A stretch of 62,936 nucleotides of DNA, filler included, from Octopus bimaculoides (Eukaryota): assembly GCF_001194135.2 (NCBI RefSeq). It is 7 parts of 7 records of this genome, joined end to end, with 100 filler letters (N's around TTAATTAATTAA, not from the genome) between each part and the next. Parts side by side here need not be neighbours in the genome. Positions count along the whole stretch, not along the records: positions 1 to 19,558 come from NC_069004.1; 6 more parts are not named here. One strand, written 5' to 3'. The notes under the pieces were generated by a model. It worked only from the letters and a program-made list of their open reading frames with translations. It searched no databases and was not told the origin of the DNA. Shown here piece after piece: positions 1,249 to 19,558 of this stretch; position 1 is the first letter of the stretch, and each line of letters starts with the position of its first letter. Made by a program: the position numbers and the translations under genes.

Positions 1249-2111
1249 CTCGCAGGGTAACTTTCTAAGAGTAATCCCATGGTCAGTCATGACCAAAGGA
1301 GGTTTCAGCATATATATATATGCATACATACATACAAAGGGCATTCGCACATTTTCAATCAACCAAAATCACTCACAAAGCATTGGTCATGCTGGAAGTA
1401 CAGCCGAAGGCGCATACTTGAGGTGCAGCCAAGCTGTACTGAACTCGAATCAATGTTATTACCAAATGAACTTCTCACTCACAGGGCTGCGCTTATGATT
1501 CACTTTCTGTCTTTTGGGGATTTTTTTAATAAGTCACTAAATTTGTGTGTGTTCATTTGATGAGACGTGGATACAGTTTCTTTGAACTCTGGTACTTTTT
1601 TTAATATTTAAATGAATATTTGGTAGTATGTTAAGCAGGTTGAGACGATATAACGCCAAACCAGATTCATTAATATTGAATTGATTCAGTCAATGCTGTC
1701 ATCGAACCCGGGTTTTAAACTTTAGGTTTTAAACTTTAGGAAAGGAAAAGACATCAAGATACGGGCGGTGAAGTGCCAGAAACTGTGGAGAATTGAACCA
1801 AATTCCAGCAACAATGTAGTCACGTTCTTCGTAGTGTTCGGTTCGAGCCAGCATCAACTGTACTTTTGATTTGGTCATTATCAACAACACAGAACATAAT
1901 ATGGTTCAGATTGAGGAACGTTTTGTCTTAGACCAATAAAGCCAAAGGCAAATTATGCAGGTGTGCCATGCACAACTCGATCCTTTGATGAATTTGAATA
2001 TTTTGTCATAATTTTACTTACGTCACAACAGATAATTCAGCGTCATTTCGAAGACAAGCCACGAAAGCATGCCTGCTGCCTGCTTCTAATTTCAAGTAGC
2101 GAAGACTACTG

Positions 2112-2238: not shown

Positions 2239-5200
2239 ATGGAAACAGAATTTACTGAGGAAGCAGAACTTACTCAAGAAGAAGTGGATGATTTCTTGGT
2301 GAAGAATCCAATATTCGTTAGATCATGGCTCTCTAGGCGAGGATTGGGTGACTTGGGGGAAGAATTATACAATCAAAAGTTAAAGGAAGAAGCAATGGAT
2401 TCCTTTATAGACTTTTTACAAAACCTCTTGTTTCACAAGAAACTTTCCCGAAGAAACCAACTCGAATCTCTTACTACAAATGAAATGTACAAAGAAATAT
2501 TGAAAGTTCTTAATTCCGAGATTCATATACACTTTGTCTGTCATAAAGTTCTTCAGAATCTATGTATCTTACTTCAATGTGAAAAAGCAAATCTTTTTAT
2601 GGTTCGAGGAGCTGGAAAAATTCAATATCTAACGTCGACCCTGTTTGATGTTACAGCTGAATCTACTCTTGAAGAATCACTTCATACTGAAGAAAACGCC
2701 ATACGCGTTCCCTTCGGAAAAGATATTTCAGGATATGTAGCTCAGAGTAAGTGTTTACTAAATATTAAGGATGCATATCAGGATCCTCGTTTCTTATCTA
2801 ATGTCGACGAAAAAACTGGATTTCGCACCAAAAGCATTCTATGCGTGCCAATTCTAGACAGTGGTGATAATTTGTTAGCTGTCGCTCAAATAATGAACAA
2901 AAAAGATAACCATTTTGATTCTGAAGACGAAATAATCTGCGAGAGTTTTTTGTCCTTTTGTGCCATTAGTATGAGATGCAATAATTTTTTGCGAAGATCA
3001 TTTGAGGAATACGCACATCACAAGTTATTACTGAGACTGAATCGATGTATACTAAAATATCAAAATTCTCTAATGAAACTAATATCTGAAATTACCAAAC
3101 TTGCCATGGAAATGTTACAGTGTGAGAGTATTATCATCTATTTGAGTGATCCGAAAAAGGATAGTATTCACCCAACTGAAACTTCGAAAGTTTTTCAGTT
3201 ATTAAAAGGAGCTTCAGATATCTCAGAAGAAATTATAACACCTAAAATAAAATTGGCAATTGAACAAAATATTAACAGCGGAAATACTTTGGATATGTTT
3301 CTTTCGAGGGAATTTATTGAGCAAGACACCATAGATCTTGAATGTAAGATTGAAAGCCAGCTGATTTGTTTAGCTATTAAAGATGCCAGCAAGAATTTTG
3401 TAGGCTGGATCGTATATAGCAAAGATTCAAGGGATATTTTTAGTCAAAATGATATCAGCTTGATGGAAATATTTGCAATGTTCTGCGGTTTAGCTATCTA
3501 TAATTGCCGTCTTTATGAAACTGCGGCAAATATGCTGGATCAGATAGAATTTACAAACAAAGTACTTAGCTACTATACTACTTGTGATCCAGAAATTGTA
3601 GATCATTTTTTAAGTATGGAGGTACTAAGTTCAAGTTTTTACAAAATTTATCGATTCGACTTCAATGACTTCTTATATTCAGAGGATGACTCTATTTTGT
3701 TGGTTGTTCGCATATTTTTAGAAGCCAAAACATTATCCGTTCTCAACATACCTAAAAAATTATTATATAGGTGGATACTAACTGTTAAAAAGAACTATCG
3801 ACCTGTCATCTATCATAATTGGCGTCATGCTATCAATGTTACTCAAATGATGTTTTGTATGTTGACTACTGGGAAATTGCAAATATATTTCACAGAATTT
3901 GATCAGATTTGCCTATTGATGGCTTCTTTGTGTCATGATCTTGATCATAGAGGATATAATAATGCGTTTCAAGTGAAGACAGCATCTCCTCTTGCTACTC
4001 TTTACAGCACGTCTGTGTTGGAAAACCATCATATAGATCGAAGTATCATGATATTAAAAAATGAAGATACAAATATTTTACAAAACGTTTCAGCTGAAAA
4101 GTATCAGCATGGCCTTAAATTAATCGAGAAAGCAATCATTGCTACGGATCTCGTAATATATTTTGAGAGAAGAAATATTTTCAAACGGAAAATAGAAGTC
4201 GATGACCAAACGTTGTCATCTCAAGAAAGCATTGATTTACTAATTAGCATGATGATGACTGCGTCTGATCTTTCAGCTATTACTAAGCCATGGGATGTTC
4301 AAAGAAAGACTGCTATTATGGTCGCAGCCGAATTCTTCGAACAAGGTGACTTCGAAACCCAATGTAAATATACTGTGTTGCCTATGATGGATCGCAATAA
4401 AAGATACGAATTGCCCAAAATGCAAGTTGGTTTTATTGATTTTGTGTGTACAATAGTTTACAAACTTCTTTATCAGGTGCGTGAGGAATTAAAACCCCTT
4501 TACGATGGGATGCTTGAAAACAGAGCTCATTGGTCTGATATTGCAAATGGTAATGAAAAATTTGATATTGATAAAGAGTTGGAATTAGTTTTATATAACA
4601 TTTCACTGGAAAGTGCTATAACAATCGGAGACCAATTAGAGACGGAAGACAAAGGTATTTCGACCCAAACTATTTTAACATTTGATCGAAAGCAAATGGA
4701 TACTCAGACTGATATTTCAATCCCAGCAGATATATGTCAACCAGAAACTACCAGACCATCTTTGAAAACCGTTGAGACAAAAACAGTGGACAGTCAAACC
4801 GAAAATCGAACTCTGGAAGTGTCTTCGGCATTAACTCAAACAGAAAGGGCTTCTTTGAGGGAATCAGAACACTTGCCGATTGTAATGCCACACGAACAAC
4901 CAGTGATTAATATAGAAACATCAGAAGACGCTGACACTGGGCATGAAAAGGTGTTTTTACAGAGAAAAGCTCACAGTACTTATGCACAGCCAACTCAAGC
5001 TATGCCTGTAATCAATCGGCAGAGACGAACTAGTTGGATCGATGAAGTTGCTGAAGACAAACGTAACGAATTATCACAAAGCCGACGAGGAAGCCATGCT
5101 CTGAATGCCTTACCTGAAGAACCCACCCAACCATTCAGAAGAATGAATCGTGTTTTTCAACCACCAGTACGGCAAAGACTATCATCTTTAGAACCCGAAT

Positions 5201-5514
5201 ATATCAAAAGCACACCATCAAACGAAACCATCATCTCGGATGTTAATACACAAATGACTGCAAAGGAAAGGCCTTTCAGAGCATCGTCTGTTGACTCTCA
5301 GGAGATGAAAGCACAGAATCTCACAGAAAAACAAGAGAGCATGAGAGGAATTGAAAAAAACACTGAAGGTTGTAGACCGCAGGTAGACCCGCAGTTAAAA
5401 GATCCGGCGTTGAACTCCGATAAGCGAAGACGAAAATGCGCGAAAATTACTACGAAACCAAACCCTACTCAAAAACTAAGTGTTCTTAAAAGCAGAATGT
5501 GCATGATATCCTAG
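2239..5514 (+). CDS. Intronless GAF-GAF-PDEase 3',5'-cyclic nucleotide phosphodiesterase, PDE5/6/11 family (paralogue A, 1091 aa)
   Basis: Uninterrupted 1091-aa ORF. GAF-A has FGKDISGYVA and NK..F..EDE. The catalytic domain has YHNWRH, HDLDHRG.NN, TASDLSAITKPW, EFFEQGD and MQVGFIDF, so the metal ligands and invariant Gln are intact. Ends CMIS (CaaX). AATAAA at 5749. Confidence 0.93.
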   Translation: METEFTEEAELTQEEVDDFLVKNPIFVRSWLSRRGLGDLGEELYNQKLKEEAMDSFIDFLQNLLFHKKLSRRNQLESLTTNEMYKEILKVLNSEIHIHFVCHKVLQNLCILLQCEKANLFMVRGAGKIQYLTSTLFDVTAESTLEESLHTEENAIRVPFGKDISGYVAQSKCLLNIKDAYQDPRFLSNVDEKTGFRTKSILCVPILDSGDNLLAVAQIMNKKDNHFDSEDEIICESFLSFCAISMRCNNFLRRSFEEYAHHKLLLRLNRCILKYQNSLMKLISEITKLAMEMLQCESIIIYLSDPKKDSIHPTETSKVFQLLKGASDISEEIITPKIKLAIEQNINSGNTLDMFLSREFIEQDTIDLECKIESQLICLAIKDASKNFVGWIVYSKDSRDIFSQNDISLMEIFAMFCGLAIYNCRLYETAANMLDQIEFTNKVLSYYTTCDPEIVDHFLSMEVLSSSFYKIYRFDFNDFLYSEDDSILLVVRIFLEAKTLSVLNIPKKLLYRWILTVKKNYRPVIYHNWRHAINVTQMMFCMLTTGKLQIYFTEFDQICLLMASLCHDLDHRGYNNAFQVKTASPLATLYSTSVLENHHIDRSIMILKNEDTNILQNVSAEKYQHGLKLIEKAIIATDLVIYFERRNIFKRKIEVDDQTLSSQESIDLLISMMMTASDLSAITKPWDVQRKTAIMVAAEFFEQGDFETQCKYTVLPMMDRNKRYELPKMQVGFIDFVCTIVYKLLYQVREELKPLYDGMLENRAHWSDIANGNEKFDIDKELELVLYNISLESAITIGDQLETEDKGISTQTILTFDRKQMDTQTDISIPADICQPETTRPSLKTVETKTVDSQTENRTLEVSSALTQTERASLRESEHLPIVMPHEQPVINIETSEDADTGHEKVFLQRKAHSTYAQPTQAMPVINRQRRTSWIDEVAEDKRNELSQSRRGSHALNALPEEPTQPFRRMNRVFQPPVRQRLSSLEPEYIKSTPSNETIISDVNTQMTAKERPFRASSVDSQEMKAQNLTEKQESMRGIEKNTEGCRPQVDPQLKDPALNSDKRRRKCAKITTKPNPTQKLSVLKSRMCMIS

Positions 5515-5824
5515 TTTCAGAACAAAAGAGAAAACAATTACTTTACTTGCTCAAAAAAAAAGATAAAGAATGTAAATCAAGGGATTATGTAAGTCTTTCA
5601 CGAAATTCTTCAGTTATTTAGTATTTCAAGAAAACGATAAAAAGATAGATTGACTATTCATTTATTTTTGTAATGATGTCAGCTTCAAACATAAGAACCT
5701 ATATAAGCAGTGATGGCGCTAACATATGTATTTCATATACTATATTATAATAAAATATAATATATATACAAGTGTGTATGTCTCCTTTCATTGTGAATAT
5801 GTGTGTGTGCATGTGTGTCTGTGC

Positions 5825-5858
<34 letters not shown>

Positions 5859-6784
5859 NNNNNNNNNNNNNNNNNNNNNNNNNNNNNNNNNNNNNNNNNN
5901 NNNNNNNNNNNNNNNNNNNNNNNNNNNNNNNNNNNNNNNNNNNNNNNNNNNNNNNNNNNNNNNNNNNNNNNNNNNNNNNNNNNNNNNNNNNNNNNNNNNN
6001 NNNNNNNNNNNNNNNNNNNNNNNNNNNNNNNNNNNNNNNNNNNNNNNNNNNNNNNNNNNNNNNNNNNNNNNNNNNNNNNNNNNNNNNNNNNNNNNNNNNN
6101 NNNNNNNNNNNNNNNNNNNNNNNNNNNNNNNNNNNNNNNNNNNNNNNNNNNNNNNNNNNNNNNNNNNNNNNNNNNNNNNNNNNNNNNNNNNNNNNNNNNN
6201 NNNNNNNNNNNNNNNNNNNNNNNNNNNNNNNNNNNNNNNNNNNNNNNNNNNNNNNNNNNNNNNNNNNNNNNNNNNNNNNNNNNNNNNNNNNNNNNNNNNN
6301 NNNNNNNNNNNNNNNNNNNNNNNNNNNNNNNNNNNNNNNNNNNNNNNNNNNNNNNNNNNNNNNNNNNNNNNNNNNNNNNNNNNNNNNNNNNNNNNNNNNN
6401 NNNNNNNNNNNNNNNNNNNNNNNNNNNNNNNNNNNNNNNNNNNNNNNNNNNNNNNNNNNNNNNNNNNNNNNNNNNNNNNNNNNNNNNNNNNNNNNNNNNN
6501 NNNNNNNNNNNNNNNNNNNNNNNNNNNNNNNNNNNNNNNNNNNNNNNNNNNNNNNNNNNNNNNNNNNNNNNNNNNNNNNNNNNNNNNNNNNNNNNNNNNN
6601 NNNNNNNNNNNNNNNNNNNNNNNNNNNNNNNNNNNNNNNNNNNNNNNNNNNNNNNNNNNNNNNNNNNNNNNNNNNNNNNNNNNNNNNNNNNNNNNNNNNN
6701 NNNNNNNNNNNNNNNNNNNNNNNNNNNNNNNNNNNNNNNNNNNNNNNNNNNNNNNNNNNNNNNNNNNNNNNNNNNNNNNNNNNN

Positions 6785-6905
6785 GAACTACGATAAGTGT
6801 ACACATGTCTGTGAATTACTCAGCCACTTGCACGTTAATTTCACGTGCAGGCTTTTCTGTTGATCGGATCAGCTGGGACCCTCGTCGTCGTAACCGATGG
6901 AGTGC
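6785..6905 (+). mobile_element. SINE family C, 3' part (5' part lost in gap)
   Basis: Matches the 3' third of copies at 8194-8514 and 21714-22080 (cagccacttgcacgttaatttcacg...gatcggatca.ctgg.accctcgtcgtcgtaa). Confidence 0.8.
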
Positions 6906-6979
6906 TCCTACATATATGCGCATGCGAACGCACGCACGCACGCACACACACACACACACACATACACACACACACACAC

Positions 6980-7020
<41 letters not shown>

Positions 7021-7141
7021 NNNNNNNNNNNNNNNNNNNNNNNNNNNNNNNNNNNNNNNNNNNNNNNNNNNNNNNNNNNNNNNNNNNNNNNNNNNNNNNN
7101 NNNNNNNNNNNNNNNNNNNNNNNNNNNNNNNNNNNNNNNNN

Positions 7142-7469
7142 GACCCCAGAGCTTATTTTTTTTAAAGCCTAGTACTTATTCTATCGGTCTATTTTGCCGA
7201 ACCGCTAAGTTACGGGGACGTAAACACAGCAGAATCGGTTGTCAAGCAATGTTGGAGGGACAAGCACAGACACACAAACATATACACACACAAACACATA
7301 TAAATATATATACATATATACGACGGGCTTCTTTCAGTTTCCGTCAACCAAATCCACTCACAAGGCTTTGGTTGGGCCGAGGCTATAGTAGAAGACACTT
7401 GACCAAGGTGCCACGCAGTGGTACTGAACCCAGAACCATGTGGTTGATAAGCAAGCCACTCCTGCTCCT
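7142..7469 (-). mobile_element. tRNA-derived SINE family A copy
   Basis: Reverse complement of the family seen on + at 30089-30485. B-box-like gggttcagtacc; internal CA/TA microsatellite. Confidence 0.85.
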
Positions 7470-7597
7470 ATATATATATTATAATTAAGTTGTTTGTATA
7501 GAACTAATAATATTGAATTGAATTTACCATTTAATGATTAGATTATTTAATTATTAAATATTATTGGGTTGTTTCCATTTCTAATTTTTATATACGA

Positions 7598-7854
7598 TTG
7601 CGAGATCGTGGGTCCGATTCTCAAACCGGGCATTGCGTTGTGTTTTTGAGCAAAACACTTCACTTCACGTTGCTCTGCGATCATTTTGACATCTGATATG
7701 TGGCACCCCGTTGCACCTGTTCAGGTAATGGCGATCTGATGGAGGTAGTGAGCTTGTCTACACAAACATTTGATCACTGTAAGCAAATCCTCTGTATTGT
7801 TGTTCGGTAAGAAATTGTCGAGCCCTCATACGTCGCCTAACAACTGGAGAGTCC
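7598..7854 (+). mobile_element. tRNA-derived SINE family D (5'-truncated)
   Basis: B-box-like ggtccgattc followed by gcgttgtgtttttgagcaaaacacttcac. A reverse partial copy occurs at about 56311-56406. Confidence 0.6.
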
Positions 7855-8193
7855 ATTATATATATATATATATATANNNNNNNNNNNNNNNNNNNNNNNN
7901 NNNNNNNNNNNNNNNNNNNNNNNNNNNNNNNNNNNNNNNNNNNNNNNNNNNNNNNNNNNNNNNNNNNNNNNNNNNNNNNNNNNNNNNNNNNNNNNNNNNN
8001 NNNNNNNNNNNNNNNNNNNNNNNNNNNNNNNNNNNNNNNNNNNNNNNNNNNNNNNNNNNNNNNNNNNNNNNNNNNNNNNNNNNNNNNNNNNNNNNNNNNN
8101 NNNNNNNNNNNNNNNNNNNNNNNNNNNNNNNNNNNNNNNNNNNNNNNNNNNNNNNNNNNNNNNNNNNNNNNNNNNNNNNNNNNNNNNNNNNNN

Positions 8194-8514
8194 TCCCAGA
8201 CCGGGCGTTGTGAGTGTTTATTGAGCTAAAACACCTAAAGCTCCATGAGGCTCCGGCAGGGGATGAAGGTGAACCCTGCTGTACTCTTGCACCACAACTT
8301 TCTCTCACTCTTACTTCCTGTTTCTGTTGTGCCTGTAATTCAAAGGGTCAGCCTTGTCACACTGTGTCACGTTGAATATCCCCGAGAACTGCGTTAAGGG
8401 TACACGTGTCTGTGGAGTACTCAGCCACTTGTACGTTAATTTCACGAGCAGGCTGTTCCGTTGATCGGATCAACTGGAACCCTCGACGTCGTAAGCGACG
8501 GAGTGCCAACAACA
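8194..8514 (+). mobile_element. SINE family C copy
   Basis: High similarity to 21714-22080 over about 320 bp; ends gagtgccaacaac. Confidence 0.85.
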
Positions 8515-9393
8515 AAATATTATTAACTAAGTTTTTAAGATTATTTGAGGATGGTTGGAATGCATATTAACGCATTGGAATTTTTCCATTGGGTTTACTA
8601 TAAGAACAGTGTCTATCTGTACTTAAATCTAAAGCAATTTAGTGTGATCTCTGGTTGGTGAACTTCTTAACGGCATACATTGTGTGGTCATTCATGATTA
8701 CATCACGGTGACTATCGAACTCAGCACCACAGAGTATCTTCCAATGGAGCTGATGCTGGGGAATGGATAGGATTGACGGAGATATTTCAGTATAAATGGT
8801 CAGAGTAGTAACTCGGCTGTTAATTTAGGAGGACCGATGTGTATTGAGAGGGAGAAAGAAGGGAGATAGAAAGAGAGTAGGAAGAAAGGCAGAAAGGGGA
8901 CAATTTAATAACATGTGCCATATATTCGTTATTTTTTTCTAGGTGCCAATAGAATAGCAAGAAGGTCATGAAAACTTCTCGGCTCTCCACCCATTACTCT
9001 ACAGAACGTAACTACAATGTGACAGCCGCACCAAAAGATCCGCTGGGCGATATTGATAGCTGACAAAATATGAGCAAGGTGAAACGATGCACCTTACTGA
9101 GCGAAACATACTGAAGTACCGCCGCCCCTTTCAAGAATCGAAACCAAAACACTATTTTTATGAGCTCAGCATTCTACCCAGTTAACCATACGCCTTCACA
9201 CACATACACACACACAGACTCACTCACACACACACACACACTCATACACACATCACACTCATACGCACACACGCTCACACAAACTCTCACATAAACACAC
9301 TCTCACACACATACCCACACACACACCTATCAATTTAATGTTGCCCTTCTGAGCAACGATGAAGTTGGTGTGGAAGGGTTGATCTGGTGTGTT

Positions 9394-9425
<32 letters not shown>

Positions 9426-9874
9426 GGTGNNNNNNNNNNNNNNNNNNNNNNNNNNNNNNNNNNNNNNNNNNNNNNNNNNNNNNNNNNNNNNNNNNNNNNN
9501 NNNNNNNNNNNNNNNNNNNNNNNNNNNNNNNNNNNNNNNNNNNNNNNNNNNNNNNNNNNNNNNNNNNNNNNNNNNNNNNNNNNNNNNNNNNNNNNNNNNN
9601 NNNNNNNNNNNNNNNNNNNNNNNNNNNNNNNNNNNNNNNNNNNNNNNNNNNNNNNNNNNNNNNNNNNNNNNNNNNNNNNNNNNNNNNNNNNNNNNNNNNN
9701 NNNNNNNNNNNNNNNNNNNNNNNNNNNNNNNNNNNNNNNNNNNNNNNNNNNNNNNNNNNNNNNNNNNNNNNNNNNNNNNNNNNNNNNNNNNNNNNNNNNN
9801 NNNNNNNNNNNNNNNNNNNNNNNNNNNNNNNNNNNNNNNNNNNNNNNNNNNNNNNNNNNNNNNNNNNNNNNNNN

Positions 9875-9938
<64 letters not shown>

Positions 9939-10482
9939 CTATTTATTATTATTATTTAATTGAACGCGACGCATCCATTTCCAAGTAGGTTTATCTTTAC
10001 CTTTTTGATGCGACTCTACTCTATATTGTTTTCTTTTTCCATCCTTCCCTAATTCTCTTTTTCTCCCTTCCCTCCTTCACCGTTTTCTATCTGCCTCTCT
10101 CTCCCCCTCTTTTTCTTTTTCTCTCTTTCGTTGCTCACACGTGACCATCGTCCAACTTTCTTTTCCTCACGTGACCATCTTTTTTTTCCTGCACGGACGT
10201 TCAAAGGACTGGACTTTTTTTCTCTTTCTCTTCTATCTTTTCTCTTTTCAAAGAAAATATTTCTCCGAGCGTTCACTATTTTCCTCTCGTTCTGGTCTAA
10301 TGACCCTCTATGTTTGTTTTCGTTCGGTTTCCTTGCACGTCTCCACTGTCCTGTTCTTTGTTCCCAAATCTGAACCGCCATAAATTTTAAATTATGTTTT
10401 AATACTCCATACCGTCATTCGGTGTACGGTGTAGAAATATATGCTGTGATGCATTAATAAAGCTTATGAATTTCTATCTGCA

Positions 10483-10540
<58 letters not shown>

Positions 10541-11034
10541 NNNNNNNNNNNNNNNNNNNNNNNNNNNNNNNNNNNNNNNNNNNNNNNNNNNNNNNNNNNN
10601 NNNNNNNNNNNNNNNNNNNNNNNNNNNNNNNNNNNNNNNNNNNNNNNNNNNNNNNNNNNNNNNNNNNNNNNNNNNNNNNNNNNNNNNNNNNNNNNNNNNN
10701 NNNNNNNNNNNNNNNNNNNNNNNNNNNNNNNNNNNNNNNNNNNNNNNNNNNNNNNNNNNNNNNNNNNNNNNNNNNNNNNNNNNNNNNNNNNNNNNNNNNN
10801 NNNNNNNNNNNNNNNNNNNNNNNNNNNNNNNNNNNNNNNNNNNNNNNNNNNNNNNNNNNNNNNNNNNNNNNNNNNNNNNNNNNNNNNNNNNNNNNNNNNN
10901 NNNNNNNNNNNNNNNNNNNNNNNNNNNNNNNNNNNNNNNNNNNNNNNNNNNNNNNNNNNNNNNNNNNNNNNNNNNNNACCATCTTTTTTCTGTTGTTATT
11001 CCATAGTGTTATTATTATTATCATTATTATTATA

Positions 11035-11039
<5 letters not shown>

Positions 11040-11097
<58 letters not shown>

Positions 11098-11280
11098 GTT
11101 CAGTAGTTTTATTTTTATAGCGTGCTTTCACTTCACTACCGAGCGCAGCTCTGTGTGCCTTGGGTACGTGCTGTGGTTTGCTGTGTTGCTCTTATGGTCA
11201 CTGTATTGAAAGTGTTTTGTGTAGGTTGTGTGCAATTCCCAGTAGTGCAATTTTCTGTATGTTATATATACTTCTAAGTC
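11040..11280 (-). repeat. Interspersed repeat, probable LINE 3' end with (AAT)n tail (copy 1)
   Basis: About 190 bp near-identical to 19358-19558, each abutting a (TTA)n run, which is an (AAT)n tail on the minus strand. Confidence 0.65.
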
Positions 11281-11559
11281 CTGGTGTTTTTGTTATGTAT
11301 TATACATGATTTTATAAGCTTACAGCTTATAAGCGATCACCGCACAATGACTAAAGAAAATAGTTTCAATTTAAATGGATCTTACCGCACCCTGAAGAAT
11401 TCCAGAATTTTTTTTTTTAACTAGATACAAATTTTCTCCAGTATAATGGGCTTATCAGGGCTATTAAAGGCTACCAAACAAAGTTTAAATAAGCAAACCT
11501 ACTGCTTTCCAGCATTTAGAGGATAATACGGCTATCCGAAAGCTCATGTCTGTTAAGAA

Positions 11560-12120
11560 AGGAACCAAACGATACAACTATGTTTTAAACAATGTTGATG
11601 CTTGTTTAATATTCAAACACAAATGGGAAGAGTGTATGCTTGCTTAACTGGAATGGAGAAAAATATTTTTATTATGTATAAAGACAACAACAGATACTAA
11701 ACTACGATGGTTCCAGTTCAGAATTATACACAATATTCTAGCAACTCATTCTGTACTATTCAAGATTAGATTGGCCGAAAGCAACCTGTGCACTTTTTGT
11801 CAACTTGAGGTGGAGACTGTATCACACCTTTTATGGTATTGTGAATGTGTACAGGCCTTCTGGCAACATTTCTTAGATTTGCTGCGTGAAAAGTGCATAC
11901 ATGTTCGCAACATGACACTTGGCCTACAGCTCATTCTGTTCGGGTTGAGAAAAAACATATACTGATGGCATCTTTGACTTGTTAATATTATTAGCAACAA
12001 CTTTTTATATATAAAAGCAAAGTGTTAAAATCCACTCTCAGCAGCTTCAGACATTTTAGATATTTTGTGCACGACATGAGTGCTTTTGTTTCACTTTCGA
12101 CACGTGATACTTAAATAGTG
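11560..12120 (+). mobile_element. L1/Tx1-clade LINE ORF2 C-terminal fragment (zf-RVT)
   Basis: Translation KIF..CIKTTTDTKLRWFQFRIIHNILAT...FKIRLAESNLCTFCQLEVETVSHLLWYCECVQAFW is a CCHC zf-RVT motif typical of L1/Tx1 ORF2. Confidence 0.8.
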
Positions 12121-12169
12121 GAGGAGATATTATGTTGCTGTGGGCTCGAACTATGCAAGAAGTTAAACG

Positions 12170-12360
12170 TTTTTTTTTCTTTGACTAAAACACAACCGGG
12201 ACCCTAAGTAAGGCATGTGCAAAATTTGAATGAAATTGGTTGTATAGTTCTCGAGTTTTAGGGAAGCACACAGACACACACACACACACACACACATACA
12301 CACACAGACACACAGACATACATTCTCATTTATATNNNNNNNNNNATATATAGAAGATTA
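12170..12360 (+). mobile_element. Non-autonomous Helitron/Helentron-like (DINE-1/HINE-type) fragment
   Basis: gcatgtgcaaaatttgaatgaaattggttg..ttctcgagtttta followed by an (AC)n tract; same family as the arms at 53512-54179. Confidence 0.5.
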
Positions 12361-12575
12361 TGATTTTGTTTTTGTTTTGCTTTCTCTTTTTCTTTCTTCT
12401 TTTCCAAATAAAAGGTCGTTTTCCATTTGTTTTATACAAGACTTCACGGTACCCTGACCGTGGTGTCATAAATTATAAAAGGGAAAACTGGAAATAAAAA
12501 AGTTAAAAAATAAAAGAAAATAGTCTAACAATGGAGTATATAAGCCCTTGACATATATGTATGTATGTATGTATG

Positions 12576-12607
<32 letters not shown>

Positions 12608-12700
12608 CATGTATGTATGCATGTATGTATTTATGTATGTATGCAAGTATGTATGTAGTATGTGTGTGTATGTATCCCCTTTGTCCGCTTTTCCCGGGTG

Positions 12701-13165
12701 AGTCTAATAGTGGGGTATATAAGCCCTTGATTTATATATGTATGTATGTATGTATGCATGCATGCATGTATGTATGTATGTATGCATGTATTTGTGTGTG
12801 TATGTATGCATACATCCATCCCCTTTGTCCGCGTTTCCTGGGTGAGTTGTCAGACACCTCCTCCATAGGGACCTACCAGAAGCAACTGTCATTATACTTT
12901 CCTGCTGGATTCCTAAGTGTAACCAACTATGGATATCATCCAACTAGTTTGTTCTTGGTCTATCCTTAGGTCTTCTGTCCGTTCGCTCGGTTTGAAGAAT
13001 CTGTCTTGTGGTTCTTTCCTGCGGCGTTCTAATCACATGTCTGTAGTACAGAAGCTATGATCTCCCAATGTAGAGAACATTGAGGCGTGACCTGGAGAGA
13101 CTCACTCTGCACTCCGAACTACGCATCCTGTCGAACAACGTTGCTCCAGAAATCCTTATAGGAAG
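12701..13165 (-). mobile_element. RTE-clade LINE 3' fragment with (CATA)n tail
   Basis: Minus-strand translation IGRS*LLYYRHVIRTPQERTTRQILQ...RRPKDRPRT resembles the RTE ORF2 C-terminus (LRYFGHV.R...R......RP.GRP). It is followed by a CATA microsatellite. Confidence 0.6.
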
Positions 13166-13285
13166 ACAGACGGGCGGACGGGCAGATGGACAGATGGACA
13201 GACGGACAGACGGACGAACGGACAAACGCACAGACGGAGAGATAGATGAGTTTGGATAGACAGACGGATAGACAGACAGACAGAC

Positions 13286-13346
<61 letters not shown>

Positions 13347-13434
13347 TGAATATATTTACAGTCACACATACTTACAATCACACATGCATACACATACACA
13401 TATACATATGCACTACTGAATGACGTAGCAAGGA

Positions 13435-13650
13435 AGCCTCACTATGCTAGCTCGACTCGCTAGAAATAGCAGATCAAATATCCCCCAAATCACACTTTAA
13501 TGATTTACAGAAAAGGACACGTGATGTAAAAAAAAAGTCCTGGATAAAACCAAACAAAAAATAAAAAAGCAAACAGGATAATCATTTCCGGGACGCCTTT
13601 GAATATTGGTCTGCTCAATCAAGACCAACAACAACAACAGCAACAACAGC
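13435..13650 (-). repeat. Interspersed repeat family E (degenerate)
   Basis: Reverse-complement similarity to segments at 25208-25385 and 32170-32800 (gatttggctgctatttctagc motif; (GTT)n at one end). Confidence 0.5.
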
Positions 13651-13775
13651 TGCAACAAGAACGACGGCATATTGTTAACTGAATATGGTATGTCAGGAAC
13701 ATAAAACAATCTCACCGGTCTCCATTAAGCCTGAAGCTTTACAACTCAATAAATCTTATTATTAATCTCGTAATA

Positions 13776-13992
13776 GGAGTGGCAAACTGGCAGAACTTGA
13801 TAGTACGCCGGACAAAAAGATTAGTGGCATTTCGTCCGTCTTTCCGTTCTAAGTTTAAAATTTCGCCGAGGTCGACTTTGCTTTTCATCCTTTCGGGATC
13901 GATAGAATAACTACCAGTTGAGCTCCAGTTTTCGATGTAATCGATTTGCCCACTCGCCCGAAATTACCGGCCCTGTGCCAAAATGTGAAACC
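13776..13992 (+). mobile_element. SINE family B copy with 18-bp target-site duplication
   Basis: Family B body (ggc.a.ctggcagaa...ccgaggtcgactttg..tttcatcctttcgg), flanked by attattaatctcgtaata at 13758-13775 and 13993-14010. Confidence 0.88.
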
Positions 13993-14275
13993 ATTATTAA
14001 TCTCGTAATATTACGTCATAGTTAGGTTGATATCATAAATGAGTGGAGTGTTTTAGTAGTAAAAGTGGTATGTCTAAGCTTTTAAAGAAATGTGTAAGAG
14101 AAAGAATGGGGGGATGAGGAGGAAATTTAGTCAGAGAGAAGAGGGAGAGGAAAGAGAGAGGAAGAGGAAGAGAGAAAGAAAGAAATGAAACTAAAAAAGG
14201 AAAATTAGGCCAAAATGGAGAGATTGATAGATACATTGATAGATAGGCATGTATACACACACACACACACACACG

Positions 14276-14313
<38 letters not shown>

Positions 14314-14317
14314 AATG

Positions 14318-14377
<60 letters not shown>

Positions 14378-14462
14378 AAGGAATACGTGAGTAAAAAAGA
14401 TTTCGTTTCTTCGTGTCGATAGAATTTTGTCAGCTGCTTCAATAATAAACTAAAAAAAAATA

Positions 14463-17400
14463 ATGTCTACAGATCTGACAGAAGAAGACATAAGACAATT
14501 CCTTGATGACAACCCACAATTCGTTGATAATTGGCTTTCAGAACACGGCATGGAAGAAATAGCAACCGATTTTTCGAAACTTAGAGTTTTATCAAAAACT
14601 GCCCTAAAATTTTTGAGTATACTGTCTCTCGAACAAGATATAAATGTATATCTTGATAAAGACACCGAACCAGAGTTACCTGCTCGTAAGATGAATTTGT
14701 TCAGAGATATACTCAAATTGGTTCACTCAGACATTGATTCAACGAGAGTTACTAAAAAAATTCTTCAAAGCGCCTGCATTTTGCTTCGTTGTCATAAAAC
14801 GAGCCTTCTTTTGACCCAAGGATTTGGTAAAAAACGATTTCTTATTTCGAGAACCAGCAATGTTGCAACTAGATCTCAACTTGGCGAAATAGATAATATA
14901 GAAGGAGACACAATTCATCTACCATTTGGCAAAGGAATTGTTGGTTTCGTAGCGGAAAACGAATGTTTAGTAAATATTAAAGAAGCATGGCGTGATCCAC
15001 GCGTTCAGAAAAATATGGGAGAGACTGACTATCAAATTAGATCGATTCTTTCAGTACCAGTTTTCGATAAAAACGGTCGTGTGATAGGAGTAGTTAAAGC
15101 ATTGAATAAATTAAATGAAGATAATTTTGATTCTACTGATGAAAACTTATTCGAATGTTTTTCGAAAATTTGTGCTCTGAATCTCAACAACGATCGTTTC
15201 TTTAAAGCTGCCCAAGGAGAAAACAAACGGCATCAAATGTTATTGAAACTCAGTCGGTGTTTTTCGAGAAATGGAGAACATTTCCAGAAGCTAGTATCTG
15301 AAATTCTTCAATACGCCATGAAAATGCTGGACTGTGATAATATCAGCATCTATTTAAGTGATAATGCAGACGATTCAAGTCAACTGACCAAGTCAGCGAA
15401 CGTTTTACAATTTTTGAAGGGAGACACTAAAGTGAAAGATGCACCTATAGACCCGAGGTTTGTATCACTTATTGAACGAAATATGAATAGTGCTAGCATG
15501 GTGAATGTAGTCAGCCTGAGTAATTCATATGATAGAACCAAAAGGAAAACCAAAATCACATTGGAAGGTGATATACAAAATTGGATAATTTGCGTGACAA
15601 TACACGCTAATTGCAATACTGTAATTGGTTATATGATGTTTCTCAGGAAGACGATTGATATCTTCAGTGAAAATGACATTAATATGTTGGAGACATTTGC
15701 CATTTTTTGCGGACTAGCGATTTATAACAACCATTTGTACAAAAGTTGCAATAAAATAGTATCCAGCCATGATGTCGCATACGAATTGCTTCAGCTTCAC
15801 TCGACTTGCGGAGAAGAAGAAGCTTATGAGATGCAACATCAAGACATTCGGACAACAAGTTACTATAAACTTTACTCCTACGATTTTATTAGTTTTTTAT
15901 ACTTAGAAAATGAACAGGTTATATTGAGTGCTCTTATGTTTCTAGAAATGAACGCTCTAAATTCATTGAAGATATCCAAGTTTAATTTGTACAGATGGAT
16001 ACTAACCGTGAAAAAAAACTATCGTCCTGTCCCCTACCATAATTGGCAGCATGCTGTCAATGTTACTCAAGCAATGTTTAGTATGTTGACCACCGGTAGA
16101 TTACAAATATATTTCAAAGAATTTGAACTAGTATGTCTGCTAGTAGCTTGCTTGTTTCATGACATTGATCACAGAGGAACCAATAATGCGTTCCAAGTGA
16201 ATACAGCATCGCCTCTTGCTACTCTCTACAATACGTCTATCATGGAATGCCATCATATAAATCGAAGTATCATGATATTGGAAAATGAAGATACAAATAT
16301 TTTTCGAAACATTTCAGCTGAAAAATATCGGCAGGGTCTCAAATTTATCGAGAAAGCAATTCTTGCTACAGACCTCGTACTTTATTTTGAGAAAAGAAAC
16401 CTTTTTAGGCAACAAATCGAAGACGGTAACAAAACCTTTGAGTCTCAAGAAAGCGTTGAATTATTAATTAGCATGATGATGACTGCAGCTGATCTTATAG
16501 CTATTACCAAGCCATGGGAGTTTCAAAAAATGACAGCCATGTTAATAGCTAATGAATTCTTTACACAAGGAGACATGGAAACAGCTTCTGATATTCCTCT
16601 GTTGCCGTTAATGGATCGCAATAATATACACGAAATACCTCAAATGCAAGTTGGTTTTATTGATTTTGTGTGTACAATGATTTATAAATCTTTTTCAGAA
16701 CTGCATGAAGAATTGGAGCCTTTATATGATGGGATGCTCAACAACAGAGCTCACTGGGCTGGTATTGCAAATGGTGATGAAGAATTTGATGCTGAGAAAG
16801 AGTATAACTTAGCTTTAAAGTTGTTTTATTTGGAAGAAGCGATATCGTGTACGACTTCTCCGATGTTGCATGTAAATGTAGCCACACAGACAGTTCTAAC
16901 GTATTTAAATCTGGAGCAAGAGCAACAAACCATCCAAACCATACTTTCTTATCCTATTGAAGAATTAGTCACGGTGAATGATCTAACAATACCTGTTTCA
17001 CCGGAAATTGAGATGATCCCTAAAGCAACAAAGAATTGTCAAACCGAAGATCGATCCCCATCTTTAAGCGAAGCATTTGTTCAGACTTATGTACCTGCTA
17101 CACGTACAGGTGAAGCCTCACCTGCTGAACCCCCTACACAAATATTCAGACGACAACCGTCCACTGCAACAAAATCTGGAGACTACTCGGAATCAGAAAC
17201 TGCAGTTTCATCACTTACCAAGTCGTCAGTTTCCAGGTCGCCTTTTCCAACAAGACGATCAAGCTGTTTCGATGAGCTTCTTTATGAAAGACGCCAAGAA
17301 TTAGAGCTGGAAAAAGGAAAATCATTTAGAAATACACTCTGTCTAGAAAAACCTTTGTCTCTCAAAAGAACATCGCGTATTATTTTACCACCAAACCCAG

Positions 17401-17915
17401 TACGACGGGAAAGCACGCAAACACGTTCCAGTGATTATATATTCCACAGAAGTTCGTCTAGCCTACGGTTATCGATTGGGGAAATTTCTCAAAAAGAAGA
17501 AATTTTGTTTGAAAACATTTCGAGGAAGTATTCCTTTAAATCCGAAACATCGCCGAAATCTTCCATTATGGAGAACGTTCTTGAGCCAGTCAAAAACGAA
17601 AATGTTCGTGAGAAGAGTAAAGACGCAGATACGCCTATTGGAAAAGAAGTACGGATTCTTTCGCCAAAAAAGAAGAAAGCGTCTTGGACGAGTGCATACG
17701 AGGGTAATGGTAGTACAAAAGGTAGAATACCTGTGGCTCGAAGGTCACTTTCTATAACGAAGGATCGAATGGATAGTGTATATAGAACCAGATCGAATTC
17801 AGGTATGCAAAAACAAATATCACAGAACATCGAGTTTCGAAGACGAAAATGTGTCAAAGTTGCTTCAAAAGATGTTCAAAAGGGTAAAAGACTGGCTATT
17901 TGTGTGATTTGTTAG
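14463..17915 (+). CDS. Intronless GAF-GAF-PDEase 3',5'-cyclic nucleotide phosphodiesterase, PDE5/6/11 family (paralogue B, 1150 aa)
   Basis: Uninterrupted 1150-aa ORF. GAF-A has FGKGIVGFVA and LNK..F..TDE. The catalytic domain has YHNWQH, HDIDHRGTNN, TAADLIAITKPW and MQVGFIDF. Ends CVIC (CaaX). AATAAA at 17963. Confidence 0.93.
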   Translation: MSTDLTEEDIRQFLDDNPQFVDNWLSEHGMEEIATDFSKLRVLSKTALKFLSILSLEQDINVYLDKDTEPELPARKMNLFRDILKLVHSDIDSTRVTKKILQSACILLRCHKTSLLLTQGFGKKRFLISRTSNVATRSQLGEIDNIEGDTIHLPFGKGIVGFVAENECLVNIKEAWRDPRVQKNMGETDYQIRSILSVPVFDKNGRVIGVVKALNKLNEDNFDSTDENLFECFSKICALNLNNDRFFKAAQGENKRHQMLLKLSRCFSRNGEHFQKLVSEILQYAMKMLDCDNISIYLSDNADDSSQLTKSANVLQFLKGDTKVKDAPIDPRFVSLIERNMNSASMVNVVSLSNSYDRTKRKTKITLEGDIQNWIICVTIHANCNTVIGYMMFLRKTIDIFSENDINMLETFAIFCGLAIYNNHLYKSCNKIVSSHDVAYELLQLHSTCGEEEAYEMQHQDIRTTSYYKLYSYDFISFLYLENEQVILSALMFLEMNALNSLKISKFNLYRWILTVKKNYRPVPYHNWQHAVNVTQAMFSMLTTGRLQIYFKEFELVCLLVACLFHDIDHRGTNNAFQVNTASPLATLYNTSIMECHHINRSIMILENEDTNIFRNISAEKYRQGLKFIEKAILATDLVLYFEKRNLFRQQIEDGNKTFESQESVELLISMMMTAADLIAITKPWEFQKMTAMLIANEFFTQGDMETASDIPLLPLMDRNNIHEIPQMQVGFIDFVCTMIYKSFSELHEELEPLYDGMLNNRAHWAGIANGDEEFDAEKEYNLALKLFYLEEAISCTTSPMLHVNVATQTVLTYLNLEQEQQTIQTILSYPIEELVTVNDLTIPVSPEIEMIPKATKNCQTEDRSPSLSEAFVQTYVPATRTGEASPAEPPTQIFRRQPSTATKSGDYSESETAVSSLTKSSVSRSPFPTRRSSCFDELLYERRQELELEKGKSFRNTLCLEKPLSLKRTSRIILPPNPVRRESTQTRSSDYIFHRSSSSLRLSIGEISQKEEILFENISRKYSFKSETSPKSSIMENVLEPVKNENVREKSKDADTPIGKEVRILSPKKKKASWTSAYEGNGSTKGRIPVARRSLSITKDRMDSVYRTRSNSGMQKQISQNIEFRRRKCVKVASKDVQKGKRLAICVIC

Positions 17916-19265: not shown

Positions 19266-19357
19266 AAAAGAGAAAAAGAGATTTTCCTGAGATGGCTTAC
19301 ATTAGAACATAGTTTCCTTTCATTGTTCTTGTGGATTCTTAATTTCTGGATTCTTGA

Positions 19358-19558
19358 TTATTATTATTATTATTATTGTTCAGTAGTTTTATTTTTATAA
19401 CGTGCTTTCACTTCACTACCGAGCGCAGCTCTGTGCGCCTTGGGTATGTGCTGTGGTTTGCTGTGGTGCTCTTATGTTTACTGTATTGAAAGTGTTTTGC
19501 GTAGAATGTGTGCAGTACCCAGTAGTGCAATTTTCTGTGTTATATATATTTGTAAGTC
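19358..19558 (-). repeat. Interspersed repeat, probable LINE 3' end with (AAT)n tail (copy 2)
   Basis: Near-identical to 11040-11280. Confidence 0.65.

What the first reader, a model, noticed from the sequence alone, without database searches (positions are those of the whole stretch)
2239..17915. Tandem pair of intact, intronless GAF-PDE genes (probable retrogene followed by local duplication)
Animal PDE5/6/11 genes are normally many-exon. Here two single-exon ORFs over 3.2 kb sit about 9 kb apart on the same strand, with all catalytic residues intact, while every surrounding TE is decayed. This implies ongoing selection on a lineage-specific retrocopy array. No poly(A) remnant or TSD survives, so retro-origin is inferred from intron absence alone.
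Basis: partly seen in the sequence, partly recalled or inferred. Interest (0 to 1): 0.7.

Follow-up and report, generated by a model that had tools for sequence, protein, structure and literature searches.

The report
Octopus intronless cGMP-phosphodiesterase gene array
Two intact, intron-free octopus genes for a PDE5/6-type cGMP-degrading enzyme belong to an old, fast-evolving tandem family that seems to stand in for the normal many-exon gene.

Summary
ORF1 (2239-5514, 1091 aa) and ORF2 (14463-17915, 1150 aa) are uninterrupted GAF-GAF-PDE genes in Octopus bimaculoides. No assembly gap lies inside either.

- **Not a recent pair.** They are two members of a five-gene cluster, with a sixth copy 640 kb away. 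They share 42% amino-acid identity, and their split predates the Octopus-Argonauta divergence.
- **One origin.** All intronless copies form one clade (100% bootstrap) inside the PDE5/6-like group. The closest outside relative, in a clam, has at least 14 coding exons over 57 kb.
- **Parent not found.** No conventional cephalopod PDE5-like protein turned up in any search, so retrogene replacement is likely but unproven.
- **Odd selection.** Coding DNA diverges as fast as the flanks, with omega about 0.7 for ORF1 and 1.0-1.2 for ORF2. Yet no stop codons arose where about 13 are expected (P about 1e-6), and ORF2's indels all preserve the frame.
- **Kept features.** Both ORFs keep the catalytic residues, the GAF-A motif and a C-terminal RRRKC...CaaX anchor signal.
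- **New finding.** A cAMP-response element sits upstream of 13 of 14 family genes (P about 5e-17).

Expression and enzyme activity remain untested.

The parts
2018..2025 (+). cAMP-response-element-like 8-mer TTACGTCA, 221 nt upstream of the ORF1 ATG. Probable promoter element.
   Evidence: This is one of only two matches to TKACGTCA in the window, and both lie upstream of the two ORFs. It sits in a 17-nt block, CTTACGTCACAACAGAT, that is invariant in Octopus B, Octopus D and the Argonauta orthologue. Across the family, 13 of 14 genes carry such an 8-mer, against a background of 0.046 per 800 nt.
2239..5514 (+). ORF1 (gene 'B'), 1091 aa: a single-exon GAF-A/GAF-B/PDE5-6-type cGMP phosphodiesterase with a roughly 300-aa tail.
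   Evidence: identical to protein P0001 on CM046624.1. The O. vulgaris orthologue P0002 is also a single exon.
2536..2970 (+). GAF-A domain of ORF1 (residues 100-244), with the NK...F...DE cGMP-binding signature.
   Evidence: Pfam PF01590, motif table, coordinates checked.
3811..4509 (+). PDEase_I catalytic domain of ORF1 (residues 525-757). All metal-binding and substrate-clamp residues are present.
   Evidence: Pfam E 1.3e-79, residues.
5023..5046 (+). Conserved tail motif RRTSWIDE in ORF1 (basophilic-kinase-type RRxS followed by an acidic helix).
   Evidence: Aligned with RRSSCFDE of ORF2, coordinates.
5425..5511 (+). C-terminal membrane-anchor module of ORF1: RRRKC (5425-5439), a basic linker, then the CaaX box CMIS (5500-5511).
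   Evidence: A CaaX box is also present in canonical chiton, Drosophila and sea-urchin PDE5/6-like proteins.
5515..14462 (.). Intergenic spacer holding six assembly gaps, microsatellites and short interspersed repeats. It contains no PDE fragment.
   Evidence: The spacer length matches the gap-free O. vulgaris spacer.
14011..14018 (+). CRE-like 8-mer TTACGTCA, 452 nt upstream of the ORF2 ATG.
   Evidence: The same element and its flank (TTACGTCATAGTTAGGTTGATATCATAA) are present in both O. vulgaris C copies. The Argonauta C-orthologue has TGACGTCATAGTGACATCA.
14463..17915 (+). ORF2 (gene 'C'), 1150 aa: a single-exon GAF-A/GAF-B/PDE5-6-type phosphodiesterase with a roughly 350-aa disordered tail.
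   Evidence: The AlphaFold model has pLDDT above 90 over the catalytic domain and below 50 over residues 801-1150. Foldseek matches PDE6 full length and the PDE5 catalytic domain, with TM 0.94-0.95.
14748..15182 (+). GAF-A domain of ORF2 (residues 96-240), with the NK...F...DE signature.
16035..16733 (+). PDEase_I catalytic domain of ORF2 (residues 525-757), with catalytic residues intact.
17253..17276 (+). Conserved tail motif RRSSCFDE in ORF2, at the start of the only tail helix predicted with pLDDT above 60.
17838..17912 (+). C-terminal anchor module of ORF2: RRRKC (17838-17852), a basic linker, then the CaaX box CVIC (17901-17912).

Best explanation
ORF1 and ORF2 are two functional members of a cephalopod family of intronless PDE5/6-type cGMP phosphodiesterase genes.

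Inferred origin: one reverse-transcribed copy of the ordinary many-exon PDE5/6-like gene arose in a cephalopod ancestor. It came under a promoter containing a cAMP-response element. It was then multiplied by DNA-level tandem duplication that copied promoter and gene together.

Shown:
- Present arrangement in O. bimaculoides: five genes within 36 kb, in the order A2(-), A(+), E(+), B = ORF1(+), C = ORF2(+). A sixth copy, D, lies 640 kb away.
- The B/C split is older than the Octopus-Argonauta divergence.

Inferred from sequence:
- Each protein should work like PDE5 or invertebrate PDE6.
- GAF-A should bind cGMP.
- The HD-type catalytic domain should hydrolyse cGMP.
- The disordered tail should end in a prenylated CaaX cysteine. 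A basic RRRKC patch would help hold the enzyme on a membrane.

More weakly inferred: the conventional parent gene seems to have been lost, that is, retrogene replacement.

Shown on evolution: the family evolves several times faster than its PDE11 paralogue. Selection clearly preserves the reading frame, catalytic residues, the anchor and the CRE, while most other residues change at about the neutral rate. That pattern is expected from a mix of purifying and diversifying selection.
For: Gene structure:
- Both ORFs are uninterrupted, and tblastn gives one full-length HSP per copy.
- Gene span equals CDS length in O. vulgaris, Argonauta and O. bimaculoides copy D.
- The Mactra relative has at least 14 coding exons over 57 kb.

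Phylogeny (NJ tree):
- The intronless clade has 100% bootstrap support.
- It sits inside the PDE5/6-like group, at 100% against PDE11.
- Argonauta orthologues support the B lineage (92%) and the C lineage (99%).
- Argonauta has the same B-then-C order on one strand.

Cluster map. O. vulgaris models CAI9740185-195 and O. sinensis XP_029650736-745 are near-consecutive runs of this family.

Parent:
- The canonical protein is 52-65% conserved from cnidarians to molluscs and insects.
- No cephalopod appears among the top 120 hits to the clam protein.
- None appears among the representatives I named. Octopus PDE11 was found.

Selection:
- Omega for B is 0.69-0.74, and 0.41 in the PDE domain. Omega for C is 1.09-1.19.
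- Flank divergence is 0.095-0.107, against 0.111 for the coding sequence.
- About 13 stops are expected and none is observed: P 3e-6 for C and 1.5e-6 for B.
- The C coding sequence has 4 indels, all multiples of 3. Its flanks have 18 indels, mostly not multiples of 3, in 1.1 kb.
- Canonical-invariant columns change half as often as variable ones (p 2.5e-4).
- PDE11 is 96.1% identical between the species, against 76-79% for this family.

Function:
- Pfam, PDB sequence search and Foldseek all agree.
- The catalytic, GAF-A and CaaX/RRRKC motifs are present.

Promoter: the CRE 8-mer is present upstream of 13 of 14 genes (P 5e-17). Counting about 8 independent lineages, 7 of 8 have it (P 3e-9).
Against: - No expression data could be reached. 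The only 'transcript-like' contigs (Logan) end in a microsatellite and include the CRE, so they are probably genomic.
- Omega for ORF2 is statistically indistinguishable from 1, even at conserved columns (0.93). By itself that is what a pseudogene would show.
- No poly(A) tail, target-site duplication or parent locus is available to prove retroposition.
- Loss of the parent rests on annotated proteomes and capped hit lists, not on a genome search.
- The NJ tree uses simple distances, and the family sits on a long branch.
- The organisms behind the three non-octopod family members are unidentified. How far the family extends in cephalopods is therefore open.
- CRE function, prenylation and cGMP specificity are sequence inferences only.
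Confidence: 0.65

Rival explanations
1. One reading: a young, lineage-specific retrocopy of a retained multi-exon PDE5/6/11 parent, followed by one recent local duplication that produced this pair.
For: Intron absence, same strand and about 9 kb spacing, and a multi-exon outgroup gene.
Against: - ORF1 and ORF2 share only 42% identity, with saturated synonymous sites.
- Separate Argonauta orthologues exist for each.
- Five clustered genes plus one dispersed copy exist.
- No retained PDE5-like parent was detected.
Confidence: 0.05
2. Relaxed copies on the way to pseudogenes: ORF2 in particular is no longer functional, and its open frame is a leftover.
For: Omega is 1.09-1.19 for ORF2, including 0.94 in the catalytic domain and 0.93 at conserved columns. 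The coding sequence diverges as fast as the flanks. The family has lost 30-50% of residues that are invariant in canonical proteins. Some paralogues do carry catalytic-site losses, Q817E and H657Y.
Against: - Thirteen stops are expected and none is seen (P 3e-6).
- All four coding indels are in frame, while the flanks carry 18 mostly out-of-frame indels.
- The catalytic residues, CaaX and CRE are retained in O. bimaculoides, O. vulgaris and the Argonauta orthologue.
- Conserved columns change at half the rate of variable ones.
Confidence: 0.1
3. In-situ intron loss rather than retroposition. The original PDE5/6-like gene lost all its introns at its own locus, for example by recombination with its cDNA, kept its own promoter, and then duplicated in tandem. 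In this case the 'parent' is not missing: it is the array.
For: No separate parent was found. No poly(A) tail or TSD is present. A conserved promoter block is shared by all copies. The C-terminal CaaX and the N-terminal motif of the canonical protein are fully retained.
Against: Simultaneous loss of at least 13 introns is rarer by this route than by retroposition. The clam gene has no CRE 8-mer in the 2 kb upstream of its first coding exon, though that may not be its promoter. Synteny could not be examined.
Confidence: 0.18
4. Assembly artefact: cDNA contamination or mis-assembly created apparently intronless copies.
For: The O. bimaculoides region is heavily gapped. O. vulgaris has nearly identical C copies that could be assembly redundancy.
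Against: The same intronless genes occur in the same order, with diverged intergenic DNA, in independent assemblies: O. bimaculoides, gap-free O. vulgaris, O. sinensis models, and Argonauta hians. Flanks align across species at neutral divergence.
Confidence: 0.01

Closest known systems
Invertebrate PDE5/6-like 'cGMP-specific 3',5'-cyclic phosphodiesterase' (Drosophila Pde6/CG8279 type, sea-urchin sperm PDE5, mollusc orthologues such as Mactra P0007)
   Same: - N-terminal motif, tandem GAF domains, GAF-A NK...F...DE, and a class I catalytic domain with identical metal and glutamine-switch residues.
- A long low-complexity C-terminal tail ending in a CaaX box.
- The octopus family nests inside this clade.
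   Different: - Canonical genes are multi-exon (at least 14 coding exons in Mactra), and 52-65% conserved across Metazoa.
- The octopus genes are intronless and multi-copy in tandem, and only about 38% identical to the clam protein.
- They have lost 30-50% of canonical-invariant residues and the NK dyad of GAF-B.
- They end in CaaX with X = S/C/A (farnesyl-type by the usual rule, from my own knowledge) instead of L/I.
- They carry a family-specific RRRKC patch.
Vertebrate PDE5A and PDE6 (solved structures 3bjc/9lss, 6mzb, 9cxg)
   Same: Best sequence match is full-length PDE5A (E 4e-128). The model superposes on the PDE5 catalytic domain at TM 0.94-0.95 and on whole PDE6 chains at TM 0.60-0.65. 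PDE6 is also prenylated at a CaaX box (established knowledge).
   Different: About 30-40% identity. There is no evidence for a P-gamma-type inhibitory subunit. PDE5A lacks CaaX. The vertebrate genes have about 20 exons (established knowledge, not tested here).
Retrogene replacement / 'orphaned retrogenes', e.g. amphioxus SYCP1 (PMC5803294)
   Same: A single coding exon of about 3.2 kb stands where other animals have a large multi-exon gene. The parent is not detectable, and new regulatory input was acquired at the new locus (PMC5803294).
   Different: Here the retrocopy expanded into a tandem family and evolves near the neutral rate. Loss of the parent and a change of locus are not yet demonstrated.
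Octopus tandem expansions of signalling genes (GPCR clusters, PMC6408891)
   Same: Lineage-specific tandem clusters of signal-transduction genes in O. bimaculoides. That paper reports signs of positive selection and suggests co-duplicated regulatory elements.
   Different: A different protein class. That paper does not mention phosphodiesterases (count 0) or intronless or retro-derived genes (0 occurrences).

Membership tests
Class I GAF-containing cyclic-nucleotide phosphodiesterase (PDE2/5/6/10/11 group) | PDEase_I (HD-type) catalytic domain with the two His/Asp metal-binding motifs | tested here: met
   PF00233 E 1.3e-79 (ORF1) and 1.3e-78 (ORF2). YHNW(R/Q)H, HD(L/I)DHRG, E..HH, the TA.DL aspartate and Q/F of MQVGFID are all present.
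Class I GAF-containing cyclic-nucleotide phosphodiesterase (PDE2/5/6/10/11 group) | Two N-terminal GAF domains in tandem | tested here: met
   Two PF01590 stretches in each protein. The model shows two alpha/beta GAF folds before the catalytic domain and matches full-length PDE6 and PDE2 chains.
PDE5/6-like subfamily (as opposed to PDE11) | Phylogenetic placement with PDE5/6-like proteins | tested here: met
   NJ tree: intronless family plus canonical PDE5-like against PDE11, 100% bootstrap. This is a simple distance method with a long branch.
PDE5/6-like subfamily | GAF-A NK...F...DE cGMP-binding signature and cGMP-orienting residues (Q817, Q775, A767, W853 of PDE5A) | tested here: met
   Motif table. 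Q775, A767 and W853 were read by eye from the ORF translations against the PDE5A alignment.
PDE5/6-like subfamily | cGMP-selective hydrolysis and allosteric cGMP binding | not testable with these tools
   Needs recombinant protein assays.
Prenylated PDE (PDE6 / Drosophila Pde6 type) | C-terminal CaaX box | tested here: met
   CMIS (5500-5511) and CVIC (17901-17912). CaaX is also present in most paralogues and in canonical chiton, fly and urchin proteins. Actual lipidation was not tested.
Processed retrogene | Complete absence of the parental introns from the coding region | tested here: met
   Single ORFs, against at least 14 coding exons in the closest outgroup gene.
Processed retrogene | Poly(A) tract at the 3' end and flanking target-site duplications | tested here: not met
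   None is visible downstream of either stop. This is expected to be erased, given saturated synonymous divergence and DNA-level duplication. The A-run at about 2120-2150 is upstream of ORF1 and is not shared by O. vulgaris.
Processed retrogene | Location away from the intron-containing parent locus | not testable with these tools
Retrogene replacement (orphaned retrogene) | Parent gene absent from the genome | tested here: inconclusive
   No cephalopod canonical PDE5-like protein appears in the hit lists or named representatives, whereas Octopus PDE11 was recovered. These were protein-database searches only, with capped lists.
CRE-regulated promoter | Consensus or near-consensus CRE (TGACGTCA) in the proximal upstream region, conserved among relatives | tested here: met
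   13 of 14 genes carry it, P 5e-17. A 17-nt invariant block is shared between Octopus and Argonauta. CREB/ATF binding and cAMP responsiveness were not tested.

The most novel reading that the evidence does not exclude
In octopods, and possibly all coleoid cephalopods, the single-copy, many-exon PDE5/6-type cGMP phosphodiesterase was replaced by a retrocopy. That enzyme is otherwise conserved from cnidarians to insects. The retrocopy captured a CRE-driven promoter and radiated into a tandem family of membrane-anchored enzymes. These now evolve under diversifying selection, with omega of 1 or more and 1.9 at variable positions of ORF2. This would amount to a lineage-specific rewiring of cGMP signalling under cAMP/CREB control, perhaps in sperm, sensory or neural cells.
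Probability: 0.3. Interest if true: 0.7.

Novelty: new variant of a known kind. Interest (0 to 1): 0.5.

Why it matters
PDE5/6-type enzymes set cGMP levels in sperm, photoreceptors, neurons and muscle, and are among the most conserved signalling enzymes in animals. If the conventional gene really is gone, octopods would run all of this chemistry on a retro-derived, rapidly diverging gene family. That would be a clear natural case of retrogene replacement followed by expansion.

The case would also be useful for three questions:
- How retrocopies acquire promoters.
- Why some enzymes tolerate near-neutral sequence turnover while keeping their frame and active site.
- Which cGMP pathways differ in cephalopods.

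The conserved CRE gives a direct, testable handle on how the family is regulated.

Tried and rejected
- **Literature.** Searches for an existing description found nothing relevant: octopus/phosphodiesterase/intronless, cephalopod/retrogene, octopus PDE expansion, O. bimaculoides/PDE5, and cephalopod PDE tandem expansion. A search on Drosophila PDE6 prenylation gave no directly citable primary paper.
- **Non-octopod members.** I tried to identify the organisms behind the contigs from ENA ERZ21867824 and Logan SRR11869384/5/91. The accession search found nothing. No named close relative appeared. The ERZ contigs share repeats with each other but none with octopod loci. They remain unidentified.
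- **Expression from Logan contigs.** I hoped these would give transcript evidence. They include the upstream CRE and end in an (AAT)n repeat, so they are probably genomic.
- **Upstream gene orthology.** I first assumed that the gene upstream of ORF1 was the orthologue of O. vulgaris gene A. It is only 40% identical, so it is a separate lineage, 'E'. The true A and A2 orthologues lie further upstream.
- **Other cephalopod PDE5-like proteins.** I named 20 further database representatives in search of a cephalopod canonical PDE5. The only cephalopod entries were family members and PDE11. The second batch of ten contained no cephalopod at all.
- **Intergenic ORFs.** Pfam on six intergenic ORFs matched only the mariner HTH. 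Two earlier calls failed on frame errors.
- **Poly(A)/TSD inspection** was negative.
- **Positive selection.** The partitioned omega test gave only a nominal signal (1.94, p 0.02, one of eight tests). I do not claim positive selection as shown.

Full report
**What is in the window**

The piece is from Octopus bimaculoides chromosome record CM046624.1, with window position 1 at about 10,436,179. ORF1 (2239-5514, +, 1091 aa) and ORF2 (14463-17915, +, 1150 aa) are open from ATG to stop.

All N runs lie outside both ORFs, so whether the gaps preserve frame does not affect the genes. The gaps sit in the 8.9 kb spacer. In the gap-free O. vulgaris assembly the orthologous genes have the same order and a 9.2 kb spacer. 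tblastn finds no hidden PDE fragment in the spacer.

**What the proteins are**

- Both match Pfam PDEase_I (E about 1e-79) and two GAF stretches.
- The best solved structure by sequence is full-length human PDE5A (E 4e-128 over residues 85-779).
- An AlphaFold model of ORF2 is confident over GAF-A, GAF-B and the catalytic domain, where pLDDT exceeds 90. It is disordered over residues 801-1150.
- Foldseek matches whole PDE6 chains (TM 0.60-0.65) and PDE5 catalytic domains (TM 0.94-0.95, rmsd 1.6-1.8 Å).
- Both ORFs keep the metal-binding histidines and aspartates, the glutamine switch, the phenylalanine clamp and the GAF-A NK...F...DE signature.
- Both end in a CaaX box, CMIS and CVIC. It is preceded 20-30 residues upstream by a conserved RRRKC patch.
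- CaaX is ancestral. Chiton, Drosophila Pde6 and sea-urchin sperm PDE5 end in CSVL, CALL and CSVI.

I therefore infer a membrane-anchored, cGMP-regulated cGMP phosphodiesterase. Activity and lipidation are not shown.

**The pair is part of a larger, old family**

A third intronless GAF-PDE gene, 'E' (P0122, 1060 aa), ends 6.8 kb upstream of ORF1. Two more copies, A and A2, are gap-truncated and arranged head to head further upstream. That makes five genes in about 36 kb. A sixth copy, D (P0003), lies 640 kb away between OATP genes.

O. vulgaris has the syntenic A-B-C run plus an inverted C2-A2 pair. Its models fall within the run CAI9740185-195, and O. sinensis has XP_029650736-745.

ORF1 and ORF2 are 42% identical. 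Their synonymous sites are saturated, with pS 0.63-0.85. The exception is the catalytic domain (pS 0.36-0.53), which suggests an old gene-conversion tract.

Argonauta hians has a B-like and a C-like single-exon gene in the same order and on the same strand. In an NJ tree they group with ORF1's lineage (92%) and ORF2's lineage (99%). The ORF1/ORF2 duplication therefore predates the Octopus-Argonauta split.

**Origin**

All intronless proteins form one clade, with 100% bootstrap support. This includes three from unidentified, non-octopod sources. The clade lies inside the PDE5/6-like group, separate from PDE11 (100%).

The closest non-cephalopod relative is Mactra P0007. Its gene has at least 14 coding exons spread over 57 kb. 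Intron loss thus happened once and completely, which is the signature of reverse transcription.

No poly(A) tail or target-site duplication remains. That is expected at this age and after DNA-level duplications. Copies B and D, for example, share about 600 nt of upstream sequence.

**Is the parent gone?**

The canonical PDE5-like protein is remarkably conserved. The clam protein is 60-65% identical to its gastropod and chiton orthologues. It is 52-57% identical to those of hemichordates, echinoderms, cnidarians and insects.

- No cephalopod protein is among the 120 best hits to the clam protein.
- None is among the best hits to ORF1, other than the intronless family.
- None is among the database representatives I could name.
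- Octopus PDE11 was recovered from three species.

This suggests retrogene replacement in the sense of PMC5803294. It rests on protein databases with capped lists. In-situ intron loss cannot be excluded without synteny.

**Selection**

Between O. bimaculoides and O. vulgaris, the coding sequences differ by 0.111-0.112 per site. That is the same as the adjoining non-coding flanks (0.095-0.107).

| Measure | ORF1 (gene B) | ORF2 (gene C) |
|---|---|---|
| NG86 dN/dS, whole gene | 0.69 | 1.09 |
| Codon-model omega, whole gene | 0.74 (p 0.03 vs 1) | 1.19 (not significant) |
| Codon-model omega, catalytic domain | 0.41 | 0.94 |
| Stops expected under neutrality | 13.4, none observed | 12.7, none observed |
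| P(no stop) | 1.5e-6 | 3e-6 |
| Amino-acid identity between species | 78.9% | 78.0% |

The PDE11 paralogue is 96.1% identical between the two species, so this family evolves several times faster.

Neither gene is decaying:
- ORF2's coding sequence has 4 indels, all multiples of 3. Its flanks have 18 indels, mostly not multiples of 3, in 1.1 kb.
- Columns invariant in canonical proteins change half as often as variable ones (p about 2e-4).

For ORF2, omega is 1.94 at variable positions of the folded domains. That is nominal only (p 0.02, one of eight tests).

My reading is strong selection on frame, a few key residues and the termini, with rapid and possibly adaptive turnover elsewhere. What function tolerates this is unexplained.

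**A conserved upstream element**

The window has exactly two matches to TKACGTCA. Both are on the + strand, at -221 of ORF1 and -452 of ORF2.

Across the family, 13 of 14 genes carry TGACGTCA, TTACGTCA or TGACGTAA within 800 nt upstream. The background chance is 0.046 per 800 nt (P 5e-17). Counting about eight independent lineages, 7 of 8 have it (P 3e-9).

In the B lineage, a 17-nt block around the element is invariant between Octopus and Argonauta, while the surrounding sequence has diverged. This is a cAMP-response element consensus. I infer that it is part of a promoter duplicated along with each gene. Binding and regulation are untested.

**Comparison and novelty**

The proteins work like invertebrate PDE5/6 and pass the sequence tests for that family. 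The gene family differs in these respects:
- It is intronless, tandemly expanded and fast-evolving.
- It has lost 30-50% of canonical-invariant residues and the NK dyad of GAF-B.
- Its CaaX ends in S/C/A rather than L/I.
- It carries the RRRKC patch and the CRE.

The proteins already exist as predicted entries in public databases. I found no paper describing the family. I rate it a new variant of a known kind, of moderate interest. Interest would be higher if loss of the parent and diversifying selection are confirmed.

Noticed in passing
window 193-516 (+), extending to about 900: Remnant of a Mos1/mariner-type transposase. The ORF matches only the N-terminal HTH_48 domain (E 1e-17), and the rest is broken across frames.
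   Followed up: partly
window 8194-8508; 11069-11268; 19357-19546; 7142-7460: Short interspersed repeats with young copies. They are 94-96% identical to copies in locus L002, 640 kb away, and are also repeated in the O. vulgaris loci. So not every mobile element near the genes is old.
   Followed up: partly
window 3763-4593 versus 15987-16817: The catalytic-domain DNA of ORF1 and ORF2 is about 78% identical, with pS 0.36-0.53. The rest of the genes is saturated (pS 0.63-0.85). The values are the same within and between species. This suggests an old gene-conversion tract between the two paralogues.
   Followed up: partly
window about 2120-2150: A run of about 30 or more A's lies 90-120 nt upstream of the ORF1 ATG. 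O. vulgaris B and paralogue D have only an interrupted A-rich stretch there. It is an expanded microsatellite, not a retrocopy tail.
   Followed up: yes
window gap edges, e.g. 5805-5858, 9875-9930, 10490-10540: The assembly gaps I looked at are bordered by microsatellites such as (TA)n, (TG)n and (ATT)n. This probably explains why the short-read assembly broke there.
   Followed up: no
L003 22597-23411 and L005 499-3906 (O. vulgaris): Two copies of gene C in inverted orientation differ by only 0.6% over 815 nt, and by 3.3% upstream. This is either a very recent segmental duplication or assembly redundancy. Three 1135-aa C models are annotated.
   Followed up: partly
paralogues outside the window: O. 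vulgaris/O. bimaculoides gene A (L003 3197-6298; L012 10001-12079) and L011 10001-13768: Some family members have lost catalytic determinants: glutamine switch Q817 to E in the A lineage, and H657 to Y plus Q817 to M in the unidentified ERZ_2 copy. They still keep long open frames and CaaX, so they may be pseudo-enzymes or regulatory partners.
   Followed up: no
L002 10001-12922 (O. bimaculoides copy D): The dispersed B-like copy lies between OATP-family gene models on the same strand. It lacks the RRRKC...CaaX end. Its ORF stops just before a (GT)n tract and an assembly gap, so its true C-terminus is uncertain.
   Followed up: no
window 5023-5046 and 17253-17276; also tail positions aligned: The otherwise fast-evolving tails contain conserved short motifs: RR[ST]S.[FI]DE, a PPNP-like patch, and an FD.D.E stretch right after the catalytic domain. 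RR[ST]S.[FI]DE starts the only confidently helical stretch of the tail. These may be phosphorylation or docking sites.
   Followed up: partly
window 10049-10381 (-): A 110-aa Lys/Arg/Glu-rich ORF on the minus strand of the spacer has no Pfam match. It is most likely a by-product of purine-rich low-complexity DNA.
   Followed up: partly
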